DNA of 64,000 nucleotides, from positions 62,001-126,000 of the forward strand of contig NW_026782168.1 in NCBI RefSeq assembly GCF_031769215.1, in the 5' to 3' direction. Below, piece by piece: positions 1-63,000 of this stretch. The notes beneath the pieces are model-generated. The model made no database searches. It was not told the DNA's origin and saw nothing but the letters and a program-made list of their open reading frames with translations. A program made the position numbers and the translations under genes. Each line of letters opens with the position of its first letter. Position 1 is the first letter of the stretch. This DNA comes from Ylistrum balloti (Eukaryota).

Positions 1-471
1 CTAATTTAAATCCATTGATGTAGTATCCTTGTTTACACGTGTCAAGACTCTGGCTGATCCAGACTACGCGAAAACCTATTACGTCACCACATATTACTTT
101 ATAATAGAATCATGTCAACTGCATACTGACTATCATCTGTGAGAAGATAATACAGTAAAGAAGACACAAGTAGAAAAAAAATTGACCAATCAGTATCTAA
201 ATCCAACTCTAGATTTTTATCTACGACAAGACTCCTACTTTTTATTTGCTTTATAATAAATACAGTATGCTGAATCTTTACCTTGTTTCTGCTCGATTTC
301 TCTGCTCCAGTGATTGTAAATTTATTCACTTAGCAAATGCTACGCTCTTTTTAGGCTTTGCCTTTTTCATATCACTAACATATGTAAATGTAACATCCCT
401 GATTATTTATCATGATACAAGTTCATGTGAACAGTCATAGTTATAAGTAGCCCAATGTTAAGTCTATTTTG

Positions 472-629
472 CATTGGACCGAAAAGTTTTGTCTCTAAAA
501 TGTTCAAATGTTCGATGTCAATATTCAAGCTAAATGCTATTTACATTACATTTTCACTTATAATGCCCATTTCGAATGTGAATATTGACGTTAAATTAGA
601 ATGTTAAAGACAGGACTTTTCAGTCTAAT
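472..629. repeat. Degenerate inverted repeat (MITE-like fold-back)
   Basis: Arm 472-527 (attggaccgaaaagttttgtctctaaaat...gtcaatattca) is an imperfect reverse complement of 579-629 (tgaatattgac...aaagacaggacttttcagtctaat), with a spacer of about 50 bp. Confidence 0.5.
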
Positions 630-1513
630 TTCATTTTTTCGATAAAAGTCTGACATTCTGTCAATCAGAATATAAAATAATTGGTATAGAAACAACCCGA
701 ATACTATAATACAAGCACGTGTCCGACTCCCATAGTATCTGAGGCACTTATGTGTGCATCTGTATACAGGTGCCAGATTTTCGAATGTCAACCTATTAAA
801 CGTTGACATGTGGTCGTAAGAACGGTCAGAAAGTTAGGTAATAAGTTTCAGACATATCAATCCATAATATAACTTAAGAAAGTTATTTACCAATCCTTCC
901 AAATCGAACGACATGCTGCGATTTTTGGTGTTCTGCGTCAAATGAACGCTCTCAAATAAATGTATTGAAAATCCGCCCAAAACAAACCCATATCTGATTG
1001 AGATGATTGGATGGTCTAAATGCTGAATGTAAGAATCCGCTATTTCACTATCATAATTATAAATATGAACATAAGATATTGTTTGCTATATGGATATCAT
1101 TCATTCACAGACATAAATAGTTTTATAATATATCAAGGGATTCGGATACAAAAAGATCAGATATTATTAGATATCCGGATAATATTCATCCTGATTTGTT
1201 AACTAGATTAGCCTCGACTGTTTACATTTGAAAATCGATGAAATCCATACGCATTTTAATACTGACGCTTAAAACGTAACAATGGCGCTTAAAAATATCA
1301 TGTCATAAATTCAGTCTGACGTATATATTAGACATTTATCAGGAAAATGATTTATCATCTGATTGTTTTTGTATTTTTTGAAGAACTATATTTTTTGTAA
1401 GGTCTTCCTGTTTACAGGTGTTGTTCGGTCTTCCACGACTGCCGATTTCCCATATGTAATCTGCCGTTGTTTACAAATGAAATTAACTACTACGACTGTG
1501 TTGAGGCATCGTC

Positions 1514-4500
1514 ATGTCGCTTGATGCAACTTCAGAAGAAAACAGTTCAGAAAATGGTGATTTGGGGCTTGGCGAAGGGTTGCGTCCCGGAGCCCTCCCA
1601 AAAATATTAAAAGATTGGAAGGTGAAGAAAACGCCGAAACAATCGGAGAAATATTTACCAGATGATTTTTACTGCGATGAATTGCATGCGCCGATTCAGA
1701 GTAAATCACGGCTGATATTTCCTAAAAGAACGAAAACACTTAGTCAATCTTCAATCGAATCTGATAATGTGAGTGAAAATGGGAATGACGATAACTTTCC
1801 AACGTTTGCAGATATTCCTTATGGAACTTCACTTAAACAACAAAAGAGGCTTTTTGCAAAAGATCTCTCCAATATAAGACAGAGATGTGTTTCTTTAGAT
1901 TCCTCATCACAGATGTTTATTCCTGATGGTTATTCAAAAAGTAAGTAGTGATAAGTCCATTTCTCTTGTATTTGCAGTAATATTCTTGACCACTTTTTGC
2001 TGTTAGTACAGTAATATTATGTCTGATGCTGACCACCAGAATCCCCTCCAACATGGATATCAGCAATTTCAAGTTTTGGAAATTGAACCCTTGGAACTTG
2101 TTGAAAATGTTACAAAAATATTGAAAGTGACAAATGTGTGGATGTATTTTCTGAAATTATTTACCCCTCCCCAACCCCCACCTCAAACCTCTCCCCAAAG
2201 ACCACCAAAAGGTTCTTAAAGGCTTGAGAGGCGATCAGATACCCAAAAAAGTAATGTTTTGGTCACATTCACTTCAAGAGTATGAAATAAAAAGCATTAT
2301 ATTGATTTTTGTGTTGTCTCATTTTTTATCGTTTTCTGGAGTTATTCCCCTTAGATGATAATGTTCTATGGAAAACTACATGGAATTAGCTTCATGTGTT
2401 CATTTTTCACTACAGTATTTCTTTTTTCTTTTTTTTTTAAACTTTGTTTTTCTTCTTTTTCAAAAGTTCAAAATTGTTTTTTTTGCTTTACGTAATTCAG
2501 GGCATTCAACTGGATGCTTTTGTGGGGGTTTGTGACCTTTTAAAGGACCGTTGCGTGTGCCGATTCAGAGACTTCTAATTCTTCTGTGCAGATGCAACAA
2601 TTCTTCTTATTCTGCAAATGTACTGCAAAAGCATTCCAGTGTGGTAGGGTCGCCAGCTCTCTGGTTTGAAGGTGAAATAAGTCAGGGAGGTAGTTCACTG
2701 GATATTTCATATTCCTAAACTTCACAACATGGTGACCAAATCTTTTGTGTAGGAGTTTGTTGATCCATATTAGTTGACTGTCAAATACCTTCATGGTTAG
2801 GCCTGAAACTGCTGAAGTCTTCCTGAGTGATGATTTCAGCAACCCATACTTCTTTGGTTCTTCCGGCTTTAAATGTCGCTTCCAACTTCACATTTCTCTT
2901 GAAAATGTCTCTGGGTTTGGATGAAGATGAAATGTCATTTCTTTCAATATGGAAAATGGCACAATCAGCTCCCATTGCCTTGGTTTGTCATAGAAATTTT
3001 GGGTTCATTCTATCTGTCCTTAACCCACCTTGACCAAAAAAATATTGGTGTCAACTTCAGAAATAGGGCATACGTCTGATAATGTAGCTGCTCCTAAGTA
3101 GTATGAAAGAAGACATGGTCGTTCTGTTGTGATTTTTTTGTACTAAAGATACCACTTTTAAACAGGTATTTTTAGGTTGATTAATTTTTTTTTTAGTTTT
3201 TGTTGCTCCTGTTTCACTCCCTAGTCACACCAGTGGTTATTCCTGTTGTTTTTATACACCTGTACCCATTTAACCAGCTTGTAGGTGATGAGGCATAATC
3301 AACAAAACTCATGTATTTCAAAGTGTTGCAATAAAGAAACAATCCTCTTTTTCACTATTGTCGCCAAGCTATGAGGATGCCATCAGTAATTATAGAATTA
3401 GAAGAATTTGAAGCATAGATGAAATAAGATTAAATTATTTAAAAAAAAATTTAAGCAAGATGTATTGCTGTCATCAGTTGTAGCTTTAGAATTTTACATT
3501 ATTATTTGCTCCTTTTTTCAGCAAACCTTCAGAGAAGTCTTAGTAGAGATGCAATAGAAAAAAAGTTATTTGAGGCAGAACAGGTGAGAATTTCTTGTGA
3601 CTTGCACAATTATATCAATCACTATTTGTTACTATCTAGATTCACAAAAATACACCTGGCACTGAAAAATTCCAATAATGACTCAGTTTAGTAGATTAAA
3701 TGTTTGAAATGTCCAAAAACAACTATATAATTGATAGTATTTGTAGGGTTAAATTTTAACAGTCATCAAAGATAGCACAATATTAAATACCCAGCAATCA
3801 TTTAACATCAATAAAAATAACAGGAAATCTGTGTTATGTGCCTATATAGATATACACAAAACCGAATATCTGGAATCGTACCATCTTCATCCGCAAAGAT
3901 GCCTTTGCCCACAAATAATCCCTTCCTCATTTTTCTGATTTTTATTGAATTATTAATACTAGAATAGTAAGCTAAAATGCTGAACTTTGTGTACTAGGGG
4001 AGGGGCTTATTTTAGGATAAATAGAAAATGTATAATTTATTGAAAGCAGTTATAAATAAGTTGGTCCTGATTCATCTGCCACCAAACAATATGACCTTGA
4101 GACATAGACTACTAGACAGGCCTGAAGGTATTTACCACTTAACTAGCCTTCATTCTTCTCCAATGATAAGGGGACATCAGACAGCCCAAATAAGGTTATC
4201 GTACTTGGGATCTTGATTCTGTTTCTGTGCTTTTCCCTCCTCATTATGTCCTTCATGGCATTTGCTTCACTACAACGTTGACTGTTGGAAGGATCATGAA
4301 CCCCACAAAAACAAAATGATATTGAGACATTGGCCACCAGTCTGACTTACCTTGAGGCAGAGACTTCATGGCTGATCTTGAAGCAGTGACCACCAGACTG
4401 ACATTGATACAGTGAATACCAAACTGCCGTTGTGGAAGTGACTTCCAGACTGACCTTGGAGCATTGACCACTGGACTGTTTTAGAAGCAGTAACCACTAG

Positions 4501-7500
4501 CCTGATTGTGAGGCAGGGACTACCAAATTTACCTTGAAAAGAAGTGTTTTCCAGATTGACCTTGGAGCATTGACCACCAGACTGAACCTGTGTTAATTTT
4601 GATATAAATTAAATTTTGATTGTTATTTTCTTCCATCAAAATTCCTAATTTGTAGACTGACATATGTAATAATAACTTATGACAAAGATCTATTTTGAAC
4701 AAGATGATAATATTAATGCTATTGGAATGGATTTGACCTTGACCTATTTTGAAAATCATTGAAGAGTGATAAAAAAATCTGGTGAGAAATACAGTCAATT
4801 GGCCACTTATTGTTGTATGAAATGTTTCAATTGACTAATAAAATGCTATCTTCTACAGCTCATATGATATCACAGTCTGTCTGTATGTGTTCTATTTCTT
4901 GTCATACCATGGCCCCTGACCTGAAACTTTGTAACTTTGTAAATGGATTGAGAACTAGATTAATGTAGAAGGAGTTGGTGTTTCAGTAAAAGAAGGAGTT
5001 GGTGTTTCAGTAAAAAAATCACCTCAAAATCGAAGTCATAACAGGTAGAAATAGATATTAGCTTATCATGGCTGTGGCCTGCATATTGGACATATTTTCT
5101 AAACATGGCAGTTTTGGCCACAATCGAAAGATTATTACCTCACCAAGATGAAGGTCAAAGGAGAAAGACAGAGGTCAAATGTATGTAATCTGGTAAGTCT
5201 GATGTTGAATTGTTTAGAGTCACAAGAAAGCATGTGACTGAAAGACAAAGTCAACAGGCCAAAGGTCAAAATCACAGAAAGTAGTCTTTTTTTATTATTT
5301 TAAAACTGATAAATTTATGTTATGAAACACAGCTAAAGACAAAATGTAAAGTCTTAGTCACTGGGAAATTATCAATTATAAGGATGACTCAGATAAAATT
5401 TTGTCTTTCTTTAAGGATAAATATTTTGTAAACTTATTAAGAAATAAACAGGTTCACTTGCTGTAGGTCAGAGGGGTTCAATTCGATGCTTGTTCACATG
5501 GAATCCTGTTAATTATCAGCCAAGAAATCATTACCAGTTAATGAAAAAAAAAATTCTTTAAAGAAAAAAGTGTTAGTTAGAAATATTGACCTAAATGTGA
5601 TGTTAAGTCTTGGCACAAAGTTAAAGTTAGAAAAATATAGATAGTTAAAAAATGGTAAAATGGTTATGCAATTCAAAAGTAGATATGCTTCAATAGTAAA
5701 TATGATGATATTGAACATGGAAAACTGAAGTATTTTGTTTTGCAATTATAGGAAGTTGAAGAACTGAAGATAGATTTGGAAATATATCACAAACGACTGG
5801 AGGCAAAATATCAAGCTATTGCTATTTTAAAAACACAGGTAAGATACATCTATATATATATATATAAAGTCAGGAAAGGGCTGATCTTGTCTTACTCCAC
5901 ACATTCATAACTTTACACAAATCATTTCTTCTATTCATATTTAGATTTTTGATATCCCTAGAAAGTGTAGGAGTAAAACACAGTGTCATCAGCAGAATGG
6001 TCAAAATAATTGTAGATATAAAACCTGCTAGATAAGTAATATAATAAATGATCCTACCTTTTGTACTTACAATGATGAGTAAAAACAGGTCCTAATCGAA
6101 AAATACTCACACAAAACAAATGTTGATGTAGGATAAATACCCACATTTCTGGTATTGTATAGAGCCGTCCATTGAAAATGTAGTTAATTCTTGAAGTCAC
6201 CTTTCTTATTTAGTTTGTTTTGGTCATCTTTTAATTTGCATTTTTCACAATTTTCCAGAAAAAAGTACCAACACTGTACTATGTTGGATGTATTAACAGA
6301 TTTTTTCATGATGGTTGTCTTTAGTAACTTGAGATTTGAAATTTTTCAAGACCGATGCATGTACAGTAATAACTGAAATGGAAACTAGTACTTTATTTAC
6401 TGTAAAAAGTAATGAACTTGGAATCAAATACAGTAATTTGATAAAAAGTGTGGAATATGCAAAGCTTTAAAAAAAATTTCTCAATTTGTTTCTTTACAAC
6501 AGGTTTCAGAAATTGAAGAAAAGGATCAGAAGACAAAAAGCTATAGTCATTCACTTGAGAAGGTAAATTACATAGTTACTATGATCTAACAATAGTATAT
6601 AAAAACAATAAACCATTTTTGTTAACAATAACCTACTTCACGCAAGTTGACTATGATGTACAAACAATTTTTGCGAAAGTTTGAATAAAAATTTGCAAAT
6701 AAGCCCATCCCTATGAAAAAAAAACAAATAAAGAAAAAAAGTTTTCTTTGCCCTTCAGTAAGGCAACTCTCTGGCTTTGACCTGAGTCTGTTGTATGATA
6801 TAGTGGCATGGAGAAGGAAAAAAGTGGACAATAATAGAAATTATGAATGTATAGTTATGAATTTAAAGTGAGGAACACTTATCGATTTGCTATCTAATAC
6901 CTGATCAGCACCAATATGGTATTTTAAACTTGATGCATGAAAATATCTTGATATATAAAGACTCAGTTAATAAGTTGGTTATTTATTATATGCATAGCAG
7001 ACATCATAAGATAAGTAATAGAGGATAACTATATTGTAGGAGGTTAACAAGCTGCACTTTGAACTGGATAAACAGGGCAGTAGTTTGGAGGATAGTCAAC
7101 AGATGTGGGCTGTTCGCTTTGACAGGTCGGTTCAAATATTAATATAACATAGTCCTACAGAACTGATAAATCTAATGCCCTGGCCTATATAGTATTACAA
7201 TTATTTCTGAACAATTATTATAGAATTATTTGATTTCCTCATGTTATCTCTGTATCCTGTATAATCAGGCAATCTGATGTCTCGTCATCATTGGTATGAT
7301 CGTTATTTGTAAAAAATTTCAAATAGGATTAAGAATAAATATTCACTTTCGTTTTATGTTTTCTTTGTTAAAGGTAACAGTTTGTACTGCCTAAATATAT
7401 ATCTGGATAACAATGACAAATATTAATAACTATCATAATTGTAGGAAGGGTAAAATATTTTACATTAACCACAATCAATACACATTGACCTGTTATAAAC

Positions 7501-54000: not shown

Positions 54001-57000
54001 ACTTTCCCAGCTTTATGACAATGGCAGGTTTTATTCTGAGCTGAAATATGTTAGCATAGTCTAAAAACAAAGTTTTCCAAATATCTATTTGTAAAGTTGA
54101 TGATTTCACACTTTTTTTTGACAGGTTCACCCCGAAACAATTGATTGATCATGTTGAGAAGGAACAGCATAAATTAAAATTGGTCATAGATCTTACCTTC
54201 ACTACAAAATACTACTTTAAAGATGTAAGTATGGTTTAATGGTAAGGATGACACATTGTTTTATGATGGATCAGTATGTACAGACTTAACACTGCATACA
54301 AAGTTCAGAGTCAACTTTTTAAACAATGAAGCATGATCTCAGTAACAAAAGAACAACTCATCGTGTCTTGTTTTGTTAAGAAAATTATACCTTGAACAGA
54401 GCAAGTAGAACAAAAATTAAAGACATTGCATAGTCATGTCTTAAAGAATTATAACCATGGGGAATCATGGTAAATTTTGTCCCACCATGAAGTAGCAGGA
54501 GCAGAACAGGCAATTCTTTTCTGTTGACTTCGGTGTCCATATTAGATTTCTGAATTCCTGTCATTTTTATTTACAGGAATTTACGAAAAATGGAGTCAAG
54601 TACCTTAAAATATTTACAGAAGGACATGTGATACCTCACGATGATGTGGTTCACAGGTCAGTAATTACATTTAATACCTTGTGTTCATTATAGTGTAATG
54701 ACAATATCACATGTGGTGATGCATGTTCATGGTAACAACTGTAAGTTTATTATGTTTGTTTATTGTAATGATATAACTCTTTGAATAATGATGAATTGTG
54801 ACAAGATATACCTTAGATTTATCTGACAAATAAAGATGATAAACTGTTTGGTTTTGTTTGTTTTTAGGTTTTATGATGCTATCGAAACCAATAAAGCTAT
54901 GAGTGAAAAAGGTAACACTTCTGCTTCTTCTGGTGTCTGATATTGTGTGTTACTTTGAAATTATGAACTATGGAAGGTGATGCCATTATAGGGTTAGAAG
55001 GTTAAAAGTCAAGGTTCATGACTTCAAAAAAAAATAGTCTTCCACATATTAATTAACTCCCTTTGATTGCAAAAAAATTGTTACATAAAAAATGCATCTA
55101 TCATTTAATGCCTTCTAAGCTGTTGACTTTGTTAATATATTTTTGTGAAATTCTTATATCTACTGGTAAGTTAATATGTCTATATGTAAATATGTCTCAA
55201 AAGTGTCAAGGCCATATGTTTCAAAGTATGCCAAAGTATCATATATATATTCATGTGTCTAGTTGTAGGATATTTTTTTGTAGTGTGACTATTGGTTACA
55301 AGTCCATGTATGTCATATTTTGTCAGTGTTTACAGAAATAAAGTGTAAGGCACTGACAAAGTAAATAGAAAGTTAATGAAGGATAACACAAATGATAAAT
55401 AAATAAAAACAAAATTGCGAATTTCAGGTGATGTGGTAGGAGTGCACTGTACCCATGGTATTAACAGGACAGGCTACATGGTGTGTAGGTAAGTCACATA
55501 ATATTTATAAATGTGAATAGTCACATTTTATAGTTGCTGTTTAATTCCACATTCAACAAAATTGTAACAAAGTGCTTTATGTACTATGAGAGAGTATTCA
55601 GTGATGGTTTCCTGTCATGTACTACTAGAAAACTTTTCTTGGGTTATGTAAAAATATGGTTAAAACAAAGAGAGAGGACATTTTTGGAAGCTCTTTGCTG
55701 ATGTCACTAATATATTAGAATGTGATTAATTAGAGTATTTCAGATTTGACCTGATTATTGATTTCTTTTTCTCTTCTGATTATATTATAGTGAAATCTGC
55801 ATAATATCATGCTCCATTTATCAAGGTAAAATGTGATAATAAGTGGAATGTGACATAAACAGTTTACAAGTTTTTTGGACATCTGAACCTGGAAGTTAAC
55901 TTTCTGATGCACCAAACTGACTTGTTTCTTACAGAATTGGTTGGAAGACCAGAATCTCTAAATCTGCTTTGTTTTCTAATTTGTACAGTGATTTTTCTTA
56001 ACTTTTTCTTAAACTGTTTATTTATTCTTTGGAATATCTAACCTGTTTCCAAAATCATTATGAATGATCATGTGTATCTGGTTAGTCCAACACTAACACT
56101 GTATTTGATGTTAACTAAACCACCGAATGAGATACGTACATGGATTTTTTTCCTACAGGTACATGATAGAACGGCTAGCCTTTAAGCCAGAGGAAGCCAT
56201 ATCAGGCAAGTCTTTTGAAGAAAAATCTTGGTTATCAAATGTGTAACTTTTATGTAACAGATAGTTATCAGTCTTGTAGTAAGAGATGCAGGAGGGCATG
56301 GATACACTTTACTGGTTTTATATACTGGAGGAAATATACTTGTTGATCACACACAAATTTTCATACTTTATCAAACATTTTTCAATAACCACACTGATGT
56401 TTCAGTAGCAGTTTACAGGAAATAACACATTTGTAAGGATTTAATCTTAACACATTCTTAAATCAAACATTTATCAATTAATCTAACATGTACTGAAGTG
56501 GAATACTCTGTAGTTACAGCCCTTGATTATTCAGTGTTGGTTTGGACTTTCCCTCCTTCACTCATTATTTGATATTATTTTACCTTCATTGTAGGATTCT
56601 GTAAAACTGTTTATCTTGTAACAGGTATAATTCATTGTTACAACTCTTTTTTTTTATGTCTTTTTAGCTTTCAATGCAGCACGAGGTCATGACATTGAAA
56701 GAGAGAACTACCTGGCCGACCTGCACACCAAAACATTGTAAGTTGTCACTTAGTACAGCGCCAATAATTAATGGGACGAACGTCTAACAGTTCGGTGAGA
56801 TCAGACCGATTTTTACTCAACCAGAGTCTGTACAATAACAGAAAACATACAAGCGTTCCACTAAGGGAAATAACTCATGATCAACATAGTAAACACCAGT
56901 GGCGTGATTCCTTTCATCTTTTTCACCTTCAGAATATCAAAAGAATTATCTTATGATATAAGAAAATGTCATAATACGTCATTTATAACATAAGAGTTAT

Positions 57001-60000
57001 AAAACACTGAAACATGTCTTTCTGGCACAGATAGAAATCACTATTAATAGACCACATAGTCTTTCAGGTGTGTTGGCAGCCGGCGCTCCCTCTGTGGTCG
57101 AGGTTGAGTGTGCCTGTCAACTACATCAGTTTGGTCATCGTCAGTTTCGTTGTCCTCGCGCATTGCTGGTGGACTACTTGTATGTAACAATTCGGGTGGA
57201 GTAGATAGTACTACGGGCGCGGGCATAGAACATGGTTCCGTTGAAGCCATATGAGGGATTGGGGTCTCGGTCCTGTTTTCGATGCTCTGTTCACTATGTG
57301 GGGTTATTAATGTAGTTTCTATAACATCCTCTGTGCCGTCTTCACACTTTGACAGGTTCACAGATACGGAAAGCTCGGGAGGTATGCGGAAACATTCATT
57401 CGCCTTCACTTTATAAGAACCGGATCGCAGCTGTCTCCCCGCGAATTTTTTGACATAACACCAGTCATCAGATATTGATACTACAATGTATCTTGGGCGT
57501 GCCCTTGTCTTATCCTTATCGGAATACAGGTAGTTAATATCTCCTATGGATAACGAAGGCTGCGAATATGGGCCTTTTGTTCCTGACTTAGACAGAGCAC
57601 TACTCGTGTGATTAGACTCACGGCGATCGATAGTGTGTTGTATGATGTCTTTGTCGACAAATGGCAACTGCTCATGGTTGAACTGGTTGTGTTGGGTATA
57701 TAATTCACGAGCGGATAGCCCAGCACTCCTGATGCGAGAGTTGAGGCGGGCTACAGCAATTGATAAGGTCAGCGGAGATACAGGTCCACCTCCAGGCTCT
57801 TGCCTCAAAAGCTCCTCCTCAAGCTCTGCCACTGCCTTCTCAGCGACAGGATTCTTGTTGGGGTTTTTGACACGGCCAATTTCTAGGTTTATACGGAAAC
57901 GCTCAAGAAGAATGTCGTCGCGTATTGACATAAATCCAGGTGCCGGGTCGACTCGGACAACAGCGTGGGGCCCATCGAGTGGATGAAGTTCCATGCAGAG
58001 TCTAAGTAAAGCATCACACAATGTTTCTGACTTTTCATCGCTGATTATGAGGGCGGTGGTAAAAGCTGTTACAGACTCGCGCAGAACAAATATCATTTGA
58101 CGATTACGCTTCATAACGTCCGCGGCAAATTTAACACCAACTGCATCAGGTGGCGGCTCTGAAGTTTGGTCAGTGTATGCTTTAGGCAACTTTCGTAACG
58201 ATGAACAGGTATGACACGAGTCGCACACATGCTCAATCGATGTAGACATATCAAGCGCGTAAAAGCTGTGTTTCATGAGGACGAGCATTTGATGCTTTGT
58301 TGGGTGGTCAAGACGAATATGCATAGCTGTGACTAAGCCGTCTAAGACACTATGTGGGACAATAATGAGCTCTGTCAAAGACTGCAGTGGGACATTTTGA
58401 CGAACTATGAGTAGGCCATCCCTCGAGATAGTGGCTACATTTAAGTAATGTTTAACATCTCGAATGTTTGTGAGCTTTCTGGAGGGTCTGGTTCCTTGTT
58501 TGAGATGAGCATGAACCCGTCTCAAGTCTGGACATTCGGACTGAATACTGATCCAGGCGGAACGAGTTGTGAATGGTAGAGATTGAATTGTGGCAAGTGG
58601 ATCCTGAGACTTTGTGTTGCGAACCACGGAGTCCTCTGTCTGTATGATAAAATTGCAGATCTGACAAGACGGGTCATTGCAGTCGGCTGCATTCCAGCTC
58701 GCAAAATCAGATGGTAAATTGGCAGATCCAGCGAGGTGTTGTAAGTCGACTTGGTATCGGCTCGCAGTAGATAGAAATGATGTTACCCTGGGGCTTGCAG
58801 AGAATTCACCTCGACGGAGCTTTTGTATGGCCTGCACACACACGGTTTGCTGTCTGTCAAGACACACGCGGTATGGCGTGACTGTATGATAAAGGGGCTG
58901 AAATGCTTGATTGCGGCTGCTATGCACAAAGCCTCAACCTCGCAGGGTAGCCATGTAACTAAGTTTGGCGCTAAAGAATCCAGCAAGTGGAATGTTTTTG
59001 TCACGCCTCACATAGAGAATTGCCCCAATGCCAGACTTGCTGACTGATCCATCTGTAACTATCCAGATCTGATCGTTTTCACACAGTATAATGATTTCTT
59101 TGGCACCGAGGAGTTCAGTTTGAGCAACCTGGAAATATTCTGAGAGTTCATCTGTCCAAATAATCTTGTCTTTTGACTGAAGTCCACAGATAGCATCTTC
59201 AAGGGAGCAATGTTTTGTGAGCAACTTCGAAGAACGCGAGCAAGGACTTTATACGCTCCAATGAACGAACGGAGCCCATGAACAGATTCCGGTGACTTAC
59301 ATGACGTGAGCACAGAGATTTAGTGAGGGCTTGCAGAAAGTCGTCCTTGTGACCATATCCATCCTAGGATTGTCGTGGAGCGGGGACAAATGATGGTCTT
59401 TGCCGAAGACAGACGGAGACCGCAACTGTTGATAACATTCATTACCGTCGACCAATTGTTAAAAAGTTCGTCTGGAGTATTGCCACCACAATACAGGTCG
59501 TCTGCTAGCTTCACGACAATACCAGCCTGTAACTGGTCACCTAACACGCGACACATGAGCTCCTCCAACATGGTTTCAGAACCCGGCATTCCCATTGCAC
59601 ACTGCGTATAAACGCGAACGCCCTTGTACGGAGTTACGATGCCGCAATACTTCTAGAGATTGTCTAGACAGAGGAATCTGGTGAAAGGCTTTGGTTAAAT
59701 CGGTAACAATCAGATACTTCCATTGGCCAATCCTACGCAAAGTGGAGTCCACATCTGGCATTAAGGAAGGTTGGGGTTTTGAGTAACGACCAACATCCTA
59801 GAACGCGGTGACAAGTCTATGTCCACCATTGGACTTGGACACTAAGAAAGAAGGATTGAGATACTCAACTGTTATTCCGAGGTCTTCTGGTTTCTTCAAT
59901 ACCACGAGAGACTCTAGCTCATCGCATTTCTGTTGCAAAAGAAGTTGCTTCTCCTTTGAGTACCGAGGGAGACGCCCTTTTCTCTGAGGAGGTTGTGTGG

Positions 60001-63000
60001 GGCCCATGTTTATGTTGGCCTCAAATCTTCCAGCAGCGCCGTTGTATCCTTTAAAGTTAGGGTCAAAAAGCGAATCATGTTCACGGAGGAGACTTCGAAA
60101 TTTTAGCCTATGATCTTCGGAAAGGATGTCATCCGGATCAACTCTGACAGAGTCGGAGTGGTAGGAGTTGCTGGAAGGTCTTTTATTATGACCAGTTTTG
60201 ACAGCTGTAGGTACATGCGCGTTTGGTAAAGTGTGATGAGGTACAGGTTTCGTCAGCAACACTTGGCAAAAATGGTTGCTCTTCTTGAGACGTTGCGGTT
60301 CATTGGTATTGTTTACTACTCGTACCTTTCCGCCTACTGCATCAACAATATTTGGTTCCAGCCACATACCGACAGAAGAACAGCTTACCATTCGAGGTTC
60401 AATTGCAACAATACCTTTGGGCGGTAGGTCCTCTGGCAGTCCGAGATCAATATGTTCCCCTGGCCATATGGTGGTGGAGGGGGTTCTCAGGACAAAGGCT
60501 TGTGTGCGGCGTACACAATTATGTTGGCTGAGTCGTTATGGAACATTGTATTTAATGACATAGGAGTCGCCTACCATAATTTCATGACGAGCGGGCCGAA
60601 TGCTGATGTCATTGCTTGACAAGAACGGAATACCGGCAAGAACGTCAACATCAAGATCTTTGACGACAAGGGCTTCTATATGACGAACGGTGTTGTCCCT
60701 GGTTACATCAAAATGTGTCTCTCAAACAATTTCTAGAGGAGTACTACCGTCGGCCTGTAAAGCATTTTGATTGGTAGGCTGAATGTTGACACCAAGATGG
60801 TCTGCTGTTGATGCTTTAATCATACTGATTTCAGCGCCACTGTCTAGTGTAATACACAAGACACGTTGGCCAAAGTAGGCTTTCATCTGCGGTGACTGTT
60901 TAATACTAACACGACGGGAAGTAGGTACGGACTCATCAATCTCAAAGTTCTTGTGCTGGTCCGGTGCAGTGTCTTCGCAGTCAGAGATGATCTTGTCAAC
61001 AGCGATAGATTGCCTAGCATGACTCATAAACTGTTTGTCCTCAGATGGCAAATATTTACACACGCTTAGATAATGGTCAAACCTTGGCCTGCCTGCTTGC
61101 TTGCAAAGAGGGCACATTTTTCCAGGGCTCATCTGTGTCCGCGTTATCGAACCACCAGGCGATGTGTGACCCTTTGTTTTGAAGGCAGTGCAAAGTACCT
61201 TTGCGTCATTATTAGAGCGGATTTCCAATAATAAGCTATCTAAAGCCTGTGAGATCTCTGGCTTGAGACTGGCTAATGGCTTAGCCCGCAGCTCTGGGCC
61301 GTAGCGTTTTACTGAGGATGGCAAGTCCTTGTTTACGAGCCGCAACCATGTTAACGTGACAAGGTTTTCGAGAGAGGGCGAGCTTTCCTCATTGGACTCA
61401 GGAGTTGTGCCATGATGGGTTATCCCCCCTCCTACCTGCAGAAGGTCGTCTTCAATGAAGCTGTTTAACCTCTGGTACAAGTCTTCGGGACGCTCCCCCG
61501 GCTCCAGCTTAATTGTATCAAAGTCCAGAAAGTGTGTGCCGGTGGATTGAAATCTGAAGTGAGTACGGATAGCTTGCCAGATTGACTGTATTGACGTAGA
61601 CTGTTTGACTACTGTGCTTCGCGAGATAATTGGACAATAATTTGCGATTTGCCCTAGCATTAATTCAAGGTGGGCAACTTTTTAAGCGGCTGTGCGACGT
61701 GAAGCTTCTGGGACTCTATCGTTATCGTTGGTGAGGCCACAAGTTGGGTTGGTAGCACTTTTCTTGGTCCATACTGACCCATCAATGAGGAATATAGCGA
61801 AGTTTGGGTCTAGTGAGAGGGTATATTGTAAATTCTGTCTCCATGCTTCAAAAGAAGTGATAGTTTCATTTTTAGTTAGAGACCATTGTTTTGGAGCACG
61901 AGTTGAAGCCATCTTCATATAACTTGGGCACACTGTAGGCCTATAATTACGTAGAGTACATACAATAGGTTGTCTGGACCGGGATAACACACACAGATTT
62001 TTTTTTTTTTTTTAAAGTGATGAAAAATTATTCAAACTGTAGCTTTACTTCCGATTTATGTTCAATAATCTCAAGCCACTACCTGGGATATAGTACAGTT
62101 ACTTTCAATTTCACAACTGGTATATCCGGTGCAAGATTTCACCTACTTACAGCTATTGAATAAACTGCCCTGTTATGCTTCGATCGCTTACAACTCGTCA
62201 CATTGTTGTAGGGGCGTATGTAAGTTCAAACCGCTGCCACCACGCCAATAATTAATGGGACGAACGTCTAACAGTTCGGTGAGATCAGACCGATCTTTAC
62301 TCAACCAGAGTCTGTACAATAACAGAAAACATACAAGCATTCCACTAAGGGAAATAACTCATGATCAACATAGTAAACACCAGTGGCGCAGAATGACCAG
62401 CTATAGCCTTTCTATAGAAATACCTGTCTATAATAGTTACTTCTGTGTACCTCTCTATAGAAATACCTGTCTATAATAGTTACTTCTGTGTACCTCTCTA
62501 TAGCAATACCTGTCTATAATAGTTACTTCTGTGTACCTCTCTATAGAAATACCTGTCTATAATAGTTACTTCTGTGTACCTCTCTATAGCAATACCTGTC
62601 TATAATAGTTACTTCTGTGTACCTCTCTATGTAAATACCTGTCTAAAATGTTTTTTATTATATGAAAGTCTTAACTGCAGCATTTTAAAGGAAATATCTG
62701 TCTATACAGGTCACTTCTTTTTCAGTTTATAACCAAATATATGTATACCTTTTATTCTTACCTGTATAAACCAAATATCTGAAAAAATACTACATGTAAC
62801 TGTCATACATTACAGAGTTAATATCACAGGTGTGATAGATTATCTTATCACCTGTAATGAATTATCATTTGATGATGTAAATATACACATCTGTTTTGGG
62901 TATTTTCAGTTTGGAAGGCTACAAGAATGAAGGAAGGCACACACTTGAACAGAAGAAGCCCAACTGGAATGATTCACATAAACCTGTTGAGAAGAGATAT

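What the first reader, a model, noticed from the sequence alone, without database searches (positions are those of the whole stretch)
56756..62391. LTR retrotransposon with CG...CG termini and a 3-bp target-site duplication
Seen: both 146-bp LTRs begin CGCCA and end TGGCG (a 5-bp inverted terminus). The PBS follows directly, and only CAG (3 bp) is duplicated outside. Established: most LTR retrotransposons have TG...CA ends and 4-6-bp TSDs because integrase cuts after CA. Inference: this integrase has a different end specificity and cut stagger. I recall a Repbase group called Troyka with 3-bp TSDs; this could be a mollusc member or a new lineage. It sits 21 nt downstream of a DUSP11 donor, in antisense.
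Basis: partly seen in the sequence, partly recalled or inferred. Interest (0 to 1): 0.75.

Follow-up and report, generated by a model that had tools for sequence, protein, structure and literature searches.

The report
Decayed Troyka LTR retrotransposon in scallop

Summary
Two 146-bp LTRs (56759-56904 and 62243-62388) match at 144 of 146 bases. Both begin CGCCA and end TGGCG, and a 3-bp duplication (CAG) flanks them.

The element lies on the minus strand. A 13-nt primer binding site for tRNA-Leu abuts the 5' LTR. The gag-pol reads zinc finger, protease, RT, RNase H, integrase, and is broken in this assembly by at least six stops and two frameshifts.

Ten of twelve assessable insertions of this and sister families in the same genome have perfect 3-bp duplications, and all have CG...CG ends.

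These are the defining features of Troyka (Kapitonov and Jurka 2008; Kojima 2025, PMC12440569), which is reported in 70 of 86 bivalve genomes, scallops included. CGCCA is found at the 5' end of 573 of 603 LTRs and TGGCG at the 3' end of 522 of 603.

Further Troyka marks are met: a CX2CX9HX4C gag finger, no conserved GPF/Y motif and no tether domain. The closest proteins come from Troyka host species.

The insertion sits antisense in a DUSP11-like intron, 21 nt from the donor. It is present in four public runs, and no empty allele was seen.

A Pol tree with named Troyka references could not be built. The scan's notes show no earlier Troyka report.

The parts
56668..56737 (+). Host exon of a DUSP11-like (RNA/RNP complex-1-interacting phosphatase type) gene. 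A GTAAGT donor follows at 56738.
   Evidence: The translation [22 protein letters not shown] hits only DUSP11 and baculovirus-type RNA phosphatase chains, weakly (best E 0.015). The P-loop exon [11 protein letters not shown] lies at about 55445 on the + strand.
56756..56758 (.). Target-site duplication, left copy (CAG on +, CTG in element orientation)
56759..56904 (-). 3' LTR (element orientation), 146 bp, CGCCA...TGGCG
56905..56930 (-). Polypurine tract: a purine-rich run at 56908-56930, plus a 3-nt spacer TCA at 56905-56907 next to the LTR
   Evidence: Read. The same ...GATGAAAGGAATCA|CGCCA junction occurs in copies C23 and C590.
57044..62011 (-). gag-pol reading frame, broken in this assembly. 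In-frame stops are at 61682-84, 60722-24, 60536-38, 59798-800, 59320-22 and 58934-36. The frame changes within about 59579-59652 and about 59062-59248.
   Evidence: Three-frame translation. Pfam on the pieces: Asp_protease_2, RVT_1, RT_RNaseH_2, Integrase_H2C2, in that order.
61058..61114 (-). Gag zinc finger [19 protein letters not shown] = CX2CX9HX4C (the Troyka type)
   Evidence: Kojima 2025 gives CX2CX8-10HX4C
60833..60847 (-). Protease active-site motif LDSGA
59494..59508 (-). RT catalytic motif LADDL, inside the RVT_1 match
57047..58933 (-). Uninterrupted 629-codon piece. It holds a conserved linker, the integrase HHCC finger (58205-58321), the DD35E residues (D in 58115-58129, D in 57938-57958, E in 57833-57853) and an SH3-like C-terminal domain.
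62230..62242 (-). Primer binding site TGGTGGCAGCGGT. Its 13 nt are complementary to the 3' end (with CCA) of tRNA-Leu(UAG)/(AAG), and it abuts the LTR directly.
62243..62388 (-). 5' LTR (element orientation), 146 bp, CGCCA...TGGCG
62389..62391 (.). Target-site duplication, right copy (CAG on +)

Best explanation
A 5,630-bp, non-functional copy of a Troyka-superfamily LTR retrotransposon lies on the minus strand in an intron of a DUSP11-like gene of a scallop.

Shown here:
- 146-bp LTRs with CGCCA...TGGCG ends.
- A 3-bp TSD.
- A tRNA-Leu PBS abutting the 5' LTR.
- A PPT next to the 3' LTR.
- A single gag-pol reading zinc finger, PR, RT, RH, IN.
- An integrase with the HHCC, DD35E and SH3-like three-domain fold.

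Inferred from the standard LTR-retrotransposon cycle:
- tRNA-Leu primes minus-strand DNA at the PBS, and the PPT primes the plus strand.
- The linear cDNA ends in ...TGGCG-3' on both strands.
- The Troyka integrase joins the terminal G of CG (not the A of CA) to target phosphates staggered by 3 bp.
- Gap repair then gives the 3-bp duplication.

The copy is old and inactive. Its LTRs are 1.4% diverged, its frame holds several stops and shifts, its family is low-copy with members 6-11% diverged, and the insertion is present in all four public runs examined.
For: - LTR pair, termini and TSD.
- Orientation, PBS and PPT.
- tRNA-Leu genes: at least 20 copies of GGTAGCG...GTTCGAATCCCACCGCTGCCA with anticodon loops carrying TAG or AAG, against 0 control hits.
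- Domain order: Pfam on the ORF pieces.
- Gag finger CX2CX9HX4C.
- Other insertions in G000: the same family has TSDs CAG, CAA, TAG and CAT. Sister families (IN 45-55% identical) have GTA, ATG, ATG, CAG and CAG. All have CGCCA...TGGCG ends or CpG-decayed forms.
- The IN search of the same genome is bimodal. Troyka-like loci reach 30-100% identity, most at 40% or more, while other LTR-element integrases reach only 21-25%.
- The best database relatives (45-66% identity) come from Pinctada, Ruditapes, Mytilus, Argopecten, Mercenaria, Gigantopelta, Acropora, Nematostella, Paramuricea, Synaphobranchus, Aldrovandia and Coilia. Most of these genera or their orders appear in Kojima's Troyka host list. 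None carries Pfam rve.
- In 80 metagenome loci of relatives, TGGCG precedes the PBS-like TGGTGGCAG in 32 of 37 cases.
- GPY at 57566-57574 is not conserved in 20 relatives, whereas HHCC and DD35E are.
- The AF2 model of the IN (pLDDT 79.5) matches PFV, HIV, MVV and MMTV intasome integrases at E 1e-13 to 1e-10.
- A contig bridging the left junction is present in four runs.
Against: - No tree with named Troyka, Gypsy, BEL or Copia references was built, so clade membership rests on hallmarks and on the host range of relatives.
- No empty site was found, so the 3-bp duplication is inferred from flanks only.
- Two insertions in G000 lack a perfect TSD: C442 has TAC/TTC, and C383 has no match. C383 is old (LTRs about 91% alike).
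- Two full-length metagenome contigs have non-matching flanks (L066 CAA/CAG, L097 CTT/CAA). These may be chimeric assemblies, but that is not shown.
- The species was not identified, so I cannot say whether this family is already in Repbase.
Confidence: 0.93

Rival explanations
1. An ordinary Ty3/Gypsy (Metaviridae, e.g. Mag-like) element whose TG...CA ends mutated and whose TSD only looks 3 bp long at this copy.
For: The domain order PR-RT-RH-IN and the Pfam families RVT_1, RT_RNaseH_2 and Integrase_H2C2 are shared with Gypsy. Troyka was originally filed under Gypsy in Repbase.
Against: CGCCA...TGGCG and 3-bp TSDs recur in 10 independent insertions of several families and in metagenome relatives. 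The gag finger is CX2CX9HX4C, not CX2CX4HX4C. No GPF/Y motif is conserved. There is no Pfam rve hit and no phmmer hit to any solved integrase. Other LTR-element integrases of the same genome are only 21-25% identical.
Confidence: 0.04
2. A member of a lineage distinct from Troyka that converged on CG ends and a 3-bp stagger.
For: No named Troyka sequence was available for direct comparison. The best protein relatives are only 55-66% identical over the integrase piece.
Against: Every mark listed by Kojima 2025 is met, down to the pentanucleotides CGCCA and TGGCG and the zinc-finger spacing. The relatives come from the species groups in which Troyka was catalogued (Nematostella, Synaphobranchus, Mytilus, Argopecten and others).
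Confidence: 0.02
3. An assembly artefact or segmental duplication that mimics an LTR pair.
For: The assembly holds apparent haplotig duplicates: C686 and C1140 share the same element and flank.
Against: Contigs of four public runs from two studies bridge the left flank-LTR junction. PBS, PPT and gag-pol lie in the expected order between the repeats. Other copies with different flanks exist.
Confidence: 0.01

Closest known systems
Troyka LTR retrotransposons (Kapitonov & Jurka, Repbase Reports 2008; Kojima, J Gen Virol 2025, PMC12440569)
   Same: 5'-CGCCA...TGGCG-3' LTR termini; 3-bp TSD; LTR length within 100-400 bp; a single gag-pol with zinc finger, PR, RT, RH, IN; gag finger CX2CX8-10HX4C; no tether domain; no conserved GPF/Y motif; an aquatic metazoan (bivalve, scallop) host.
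   Different: Nothing that defines the group. This copy is degraded, and its family is low-copy and 6-11% diverged. Whether the family is already catalogued could not be checked. PBS and PPT features are not covered in the paper's main text.
   Same: LTR-PBS-gag-pol-PPT-LTR plan; PR-RT-RH-IN order (Mag); an RNase H of the Gypsy type; an HHCC-DD35E integrase.
   Different: Gypsy has TG...CA ends, 4-6-bp TSDs, a CX2CX4HX4C finger and often a GPF/Y module. By my recollection, not checked here, Gmr1-like elements place IN before RT; this element does not.
Retroviral integrases in solved intasomes (PFV 3L2Q/5FRM, HIV-1, MVV, MMTV)
   Same: The predicted three-domain fold (HHCC N-terminal domain, RNase H-like DDE core, SH3-like C-terminal domain) matches at Foldseek E 1e-13 to 1e-10.
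   Different: Only 11-16% identity. phmmer finds none of them. From my own knowledge, retroviral enzymes cut after CA and give 4-, 5- or 6-bp staggers. Here the joined end is CG and the stagger is 3 bp.

Membership tests
Troyka | LTR termini 5'-CG...CG-3' (typically CGCCA...TGGCG) | tested here: met
   Both LTRs read CGCCA...TGGCG. The same holds in all other copies and families in G000, allowing for CpG decay to TGCCA, CACCA and TGGTG.
Troyka | 3-bp target-site duplication | tested here: met
   CAG/CAG at this copy. Ten of 12 assessable insertions in G000 are perfect at 3 bp and none is longer. No empty site was available.
Troyka | LTR 100-400 bp; internal part 1.5-7.7 kb; single Gag-Pol with zinc finger, RP, RT, RH, IN; no env | tested here: met
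   LTR 146 bp, internal part 5,338 bp. Pfam order is protease, RVT_1, RT_RNaseH_2, Integrase_H2C2. The coding frame fills element positions 378-5342, leaving no room for env.
Troyka | Gag zinc finger CX2CX8-10HX4C instead of CX2CX4HX4C | tested here: met
   [19 protein letters not shown] = CX2CX9HX4C at 61058-61114.
Troyka | No GPF/Y motif in the integrase | tested here: met
   The tripeptide GPY occurs at 57566-57574, but it falls in a column not conserved among 20 relatives, while HHCC and DD35E are conserved. No module-level model was available.
Troyka | No tether domain between RT and RH | tested here: met
   The end of RVT_1 (about 59360) and the start of RT_RNaseH_2 (about 59158) are about 67 codons apart, the usual connection length. 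This is an approximate reading, because a frameshift lies in the region.
Troyka | Pol groups with Troyka references in a phylogeny, apart from Gypsy, BEL and Copia | not testable with these tools
   No named Troyka, Gypsy or BEL reference sequences were held. Indirect evidence: relatives come from Troyka host taxa; there is a clear gap to other integrases in the same genome; relatives' loci share the termini.
Troyka | Host is an aquatic metazoan | tested here: inconclusive
   'Scallop' comes from an earlier unchecked note (s1-236923). The relatives are bivalve, cnidarian and fish proteins. I did not identify the species.
Ty3/Gypsy (Metaviridae) | TG...CA termini with 4-6-bp TSD | tested here: not met

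The most novel reading that the evidence does not exclude
Troyka cDNA ends may be processed in threes. In this element, in its sister families and in most metagenome relatives, the PPT purine run is separated from the LTR's CGCCA by a 3-nt pyrimidine-led spacer (TCA, TTG, CCA, TTA). The other LTR end abuts a tRNA-Leu PBS that begins TGG. If the plus-strand primer is cut at the end of the purine run, and the tRNA's CCA is left on the minus strand, both cDNA ends would carry 3 extra bases. The integrase would then trim these back to CG-OH. That would be a trinucleotide counterpart of the retroviral dinucleotide 3'-processing, matching the 3-bp stagger. The main text of the 2025 Troyka paper does not discuss PBS or PPT.
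Probability: 0.12. Interest if true: 0.4.

Novelty: already known. Interest (0 to 1): 0.15.

Why it matters
It matters little beyond annotation. The copy is a textbook Troyka, and it shows that the first-stage reader can spot this superfamily from raw sequence. LTR finders that demand TG...CA ends and 4-6-bp TSDs will miss such elements, as Kojima 2025 points out, so flagging them improves repeat annotation of mollusc genomes. The side observations (a tRNA-Leu PBS abutting the LTR, a 3-nt PPT spacer, an integrase too divergent for Pfam rve yet with a retroviral-type fold) could guide a biochemical study of how a 3-bp stagger and CG-end recognition arise.

Tried and rejected
The tRNA genes and the non-Troyka integrase loci could not be cut out. 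The tRNA was read from the printed pattern matches instead.
- The 16-nt PBS complement, with up to 1 mismatch, found only element copies and no tRNA.
- A pattern demanding a perfect GGCAGCG 5' acceptor strand found nothing. The real gene starts GGTAGCG, with a G-U pair.
- Empty site: read laying on 56480-62470 in four runs gave no joint across the element, and a contig bridges the left junction in each run. These are contigs, which show presence, not absence. No other species was available.
- phmmer of the integrase piece against the PDB found no integrase. A profile reached BIV, MMTV and FIV cores only weakly.
- TSDs could not be trusted in metagenome contigs. Many contigs start and end inside LTRs, and the two complete ones have non-matching flanks.
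- An RT/IN tree with Troyka, Mag and Gmr1 references was not built, for lack of reference sequences.
- Species identification was not achieved. The Argopecten irradians protein P0110 is at most 72% identical to any locus fetched from this genome.
- Rejected readings: an element on the + strand (PBS, PPT and ORFs all read on the minus strand), a longer TSD, and TG...CA ends obtained by shifting the LTR borders.
Full report
**Observation**

The direct-repeat search finds one long pair in 56000-63000: 56759-56904 and 62243-62388, 146 nt each. Aligned with 20 nt of flank, the two copies differ at 2 of 146 positions (one C/T at a CpG, one A/G). Identity stops abruptly at both borders. Each copy begins CGCCA and ends TGGCG on either strand, because the five bases are an inverted pair. 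Outside lie CAG (56756-56758) and CAG (62389-62391). The next base out does not match, so the duplication is 3 bp and no longer.

**Orientation and anatomy**

The element reads on the minus strand.
- Directly after the LTR at 62243-62388 comes TGGTGGCAGCGGT (62242-62230).
- Directly before the other LTR comes a purine-rich run followed by TCA (56930-56905).
- Translation of the minus strand gives one long gag-pol path from about 62011 to 57047. In this assembly it is interrupted by in-frame stops at 61682-84, 60722-24, 60536-38, 59798-800, 59320-22 and 58934-36, and by two changes of frame within about 59579-59652 and about 59062-59248.
- Pfam on the separate pieces gives Asp_protease_2, RVT_1, RT_RNaseH_2 and Integrase_H2C2 in that order. 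All are weak because the pieces are short.
- Recognisable motifs are the gag finger [24 protein letters not shown] (protease), LADDL (RT), and the integrase HX4H...CX2C with D, D-35-E.
- The last 629 codons (58933-57047) are uninterrupted.
- There is no room for an env gene.

**Primer**

The pattern GTTCRA-N7-CGCTGCCA occurs 22 times in the genome against 0 in the reversed control. Twenty-one of these read GTTCGAATCCCACCGCTGCCA. Extended to the 5' side, 20 full genes of 81-82 nt are printed. They start GGTAGCGTGGCCGAG and have anticodon loops carrying TAG or AAG, so they are tRNA-Leu(UAG) and tRNA-Leu(AAG) (the anticodon was read by eye, and ARAGORN could not be run because loci could no longer be cut). 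With CCA added, the last 13 nt of these tRNAs are the exact complement of the PBS. The PBS abuts the LTR with no spacer.

**Other copies in the same genome**

The LTR finds 11 matches. A search with the integrase piece finds about 15-19 Troyka-like loci (30-100% identity, most at 40% or more). Below these comes a clear drop to other LTR-element integrases at 21-25% identity.

I cut out the loci and read the borders. TSDs below are given as read on the strand shown, which is not always the element's own orientation.
- Same family:
  - C23:46401-51237, TSD CAG.
  - C590:145174-150519, TSD CAA.
  - Solo LTR at C258, TSD TAG.
  - Solo LTR at C772, TSD CAT.
  - C367 and C534 are truncated.
- Sister families (162-200-bp LTRs, CGCCAGTGAT...ACTGGCG, and others):
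  - C686, TSD GTA. C1140 has the same element and the same flank, and is probably a haplotig.
  - C329, TSD ATG.
  - C107, TSD ATG.
  - C49, TSD CAG.
  - C19, TSD CAG.
  - C442, TAC/TTC, so 2 of 3 match.
  - C383, no match. This copy is old, its LTRs are about 91% alike, and one LTR start is damaged.
  - C141, C209 and C712 could not be assessed.

With the window copy, that makes 10 perfect 3-bp duplications among 12 assessable insertions, where chance gives 1 in 64 each. Every LTR starts CGCCA and ends TGGCG, or shows forms explicable by CpG decay (TGCCA, CACCA, CGTCA, TGGTG, TGACG). No relative has TG...CA ends.

**Relatives elsewhere**

The word-based protein search with the integrase piece gives 716 hits. 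The best are 45-66% identical (one short fragment reaches 70%). Named sources include Pinctada, Ruditapes, Mytilus, Mercenaria, Argopecten, Gigantopelta, Acropora, Nematostella, Paramuricea, Synaphobranchus, Aldrovandia and Coilia. None of the listed relatives has a precomputed Pfam rve domain.

In 80 metagenome contigs encoding relatives, the string TGGTGGCAG occurs 37 times. It is preceded by TGGCG 32 times, TGACG 3 times, and TCGCG and TGGTG once each. The contiguous match to the tRNA-Leu 3' end is 9-18 nt, mostly 11 or 13 nt.

**What is known**

Kojima (J Gen Virol 2025, PMC12440569) reviews Troyka, first described by Kapitonov and Jurka in Repbase Reports 2008 as gypsy-like elements inducing 3-bp TSDs. 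The paper gives these features:
- 5'-CG...CG-3' termini, with CGCCA in 573 of 603 LTRs at the 5' end and TGGCG in 522 of 603 at the 3' end.
- 3-bp TSDs, confirmed against empty sites in Porites, Mytilus, Heliocidaris and leuciscine fishes.
- LTRs of 100-400 bp.
- A single Gag-Pol with zinc finger, RP, RT, RH and IN.
- A gag finger CX2CX8-10HX4C.
- No tether domain and no GPF/Y motif.
- Only aquatic animals as hosts, with 70 of 86 bivalve genomes positive, including five scallop species.

The window element meets each of these that I could test (see the membership table). The host genera of its nearest protein relatives largely coincide with the paper's list, for example Troyka-1_NV of Nematostella, Troyka-1_SynKau of Synaphobranchus, Notacanthiformes, Clupeiformes and Neomphalida. 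The element is therefore a member of a published superfamily, not a new lineage.

**Integrase**

phmmer of the 629-aa piece finds no solved integrase. A profile of 35 relatives reaches BIV, MMTV and FIV catalytic cores and the MLV N-terminal domain only at E 3e-4 to 0.1. An AlphaFold2 model of residues 185-520 with that alignment (mean pLDDT 79.5) has a helical N-terminal domain, an RNase H-like core and a beta-barrel C-terminal domain. It matches PFV, HIV-1, SIV, MVV and MMTV intasome integrases at Foldseek E 2e-13 to 3e-10 with 11-16% identity.

The enzyme is thus a retroviral-type integrase in fold but far diverged in sequence. This fits altered end recognition and stagger, but does not prove it. 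That the stagger is set by the spacing of the two active sites in the intasome is general knowledge, not tested here.

**Host context**

On the + strand an exon (56668-56737) encodes ...[22 protein letters not shown]. Its only PDB matches, all weak (best E 0.015), are the C-terminal part of DUSP11 (RNA/RNP complex-1-interacting phosphatase) and the related baculovirus-type RNA phosphatases. An upstream exon near 55445 carries [11 protein letters not shown], which matches the same phosphatases and the mRNA-capping enzyme. The donor GTAAGT starts at 56738, and the LTR starts at 56759, 21 nt later. The gene is on the + strand and the element on the minus strand.

**Age and population state**

The LTR divergence is 2 of 146 (1.4%), and one of the two changes is at a CpG. 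With an assumed 2-5e-9 substitutions per site per year this is roughly 1-3 million years, but the rate is not known for this animal.

In four public runs from two studies a 970-nt contig crosses the left junction (56480-56804, 3 differences). No contig joins the two flanks. The loose ends at the LTR borders are the flanks of the other copies already found in the assembly. The insertion therefore looks fixed or common, and the family inactive.

The public contigs differ from the window at many places inside the element, including single-base length differences. The count of breaks above holds for this assembly only, and I derived no other reading.

**Limits**
- No tree with named references was built.
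- No empty site was found.
- The species was not identified; 'scallop' comes from an earlier unchecked note.

**Verdict**

The kind is already known and interest is low.

Noticed in passing
window 62230-62242; G000 families (L048-L060); L061-L140: The PBS of this and most related Troyka elements is complementary to the 3' end of tRNA-Leu(UAG/AAG) (TGGTGGCAGCG..., 11-18 nt) and abuts the LTR's TGGCG with no spacer. A minority of relatives carry other PBS strings (for example TGGTTACTCCCT x6, TGGTGAAAGGGC x4). The main text of the 2025 Troyka paper never mentions PBS, tRNA or PPT.
   Followed up: partly
window 56905-56907; L048-L060; L061-L140: Between the purine run of the PPT and the LTR's CGCCA there are regularly 3 bases that start with a pyrimidine. 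The G000 families have TCA, TAG, CCA, CTA and TGA. The metagenome relatives have TCA 18, TTG 14, CCA 13 and TTA 6. The meaning is unknown; the spacer may reflect trimming of 3 bases at the cDNA end.
   Followed up: partly
window 58400-58933 (minus strand; residues 1-180 of the 629-aa piece): The stretch between RNase H and the integrase HHCC finger is strongly conserved among 20 relatives. It holds motifs such as KL.RG.FS.SPR, SDF.S.NA..C....CQ.C.F and HL.QGTRPS.K.TN..DVK.YL. The H...C-X4-C-X2-C pattern could be an extra metal-binding module. It was not folded or searched separately.
   Followed up: no
window 62407-62649: A 43-bp minisatellite (5.7 copies, 96% matches) starts 16 bp beyond the right TSD.
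   Followed up: partly
G000:C686:4000-12800 (L048) and G000:C1140:50600-59400 (L049): The same sister-family Troyka element, with the same right flank (gtaagcaaaa), sits on two contigs. This is probably an uncollapsed haplotig pair in the assembly.
   Followed up: no
L003/L005 (C23), L007/L008 (C590), L054 (C49), L056 (C141): Older copies show the terminal CG decayed to TG or CA (TGCCA, CACCA, TGGTG). This is as expected if the terminal CpGs are methylated. Such copies could be misread as TG-ended elements.
   Followed up: partly
TSDs of 10 insertions in G000: The 3-bp targets are CTG, CAG, TAG, CAA, CAT, GTA, ATG, ATG, CAG and CAG. Four of the 10 are CWG and 8 of 10 contain CA or TG. This may be a weak target preference, but the sample is too small to test.
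   Followed up: no
window 56480-62470 versus runs X1-X3, X8: The public contigs of this species differ from the window by about 0.7-1% in the unique flank (share of words 0.81). They also differ at many places inside the element, including single-base length differences. So either the population is very polymorphic or the assembly carries small errors.
   Followed up: no
L066 (OFEV01000020.1) and L097 (OMLO01002720.1): Two full-length relatives on metagenome contigs have CGCCA...TGGCG LTRs, but their flanking triplets do not match (CAA/CAG and CTT/CAA). In L066 the LTRs are 100% identical. Chimeric assembly is the simplest reading, but this was not shown.
   Followed up: partly
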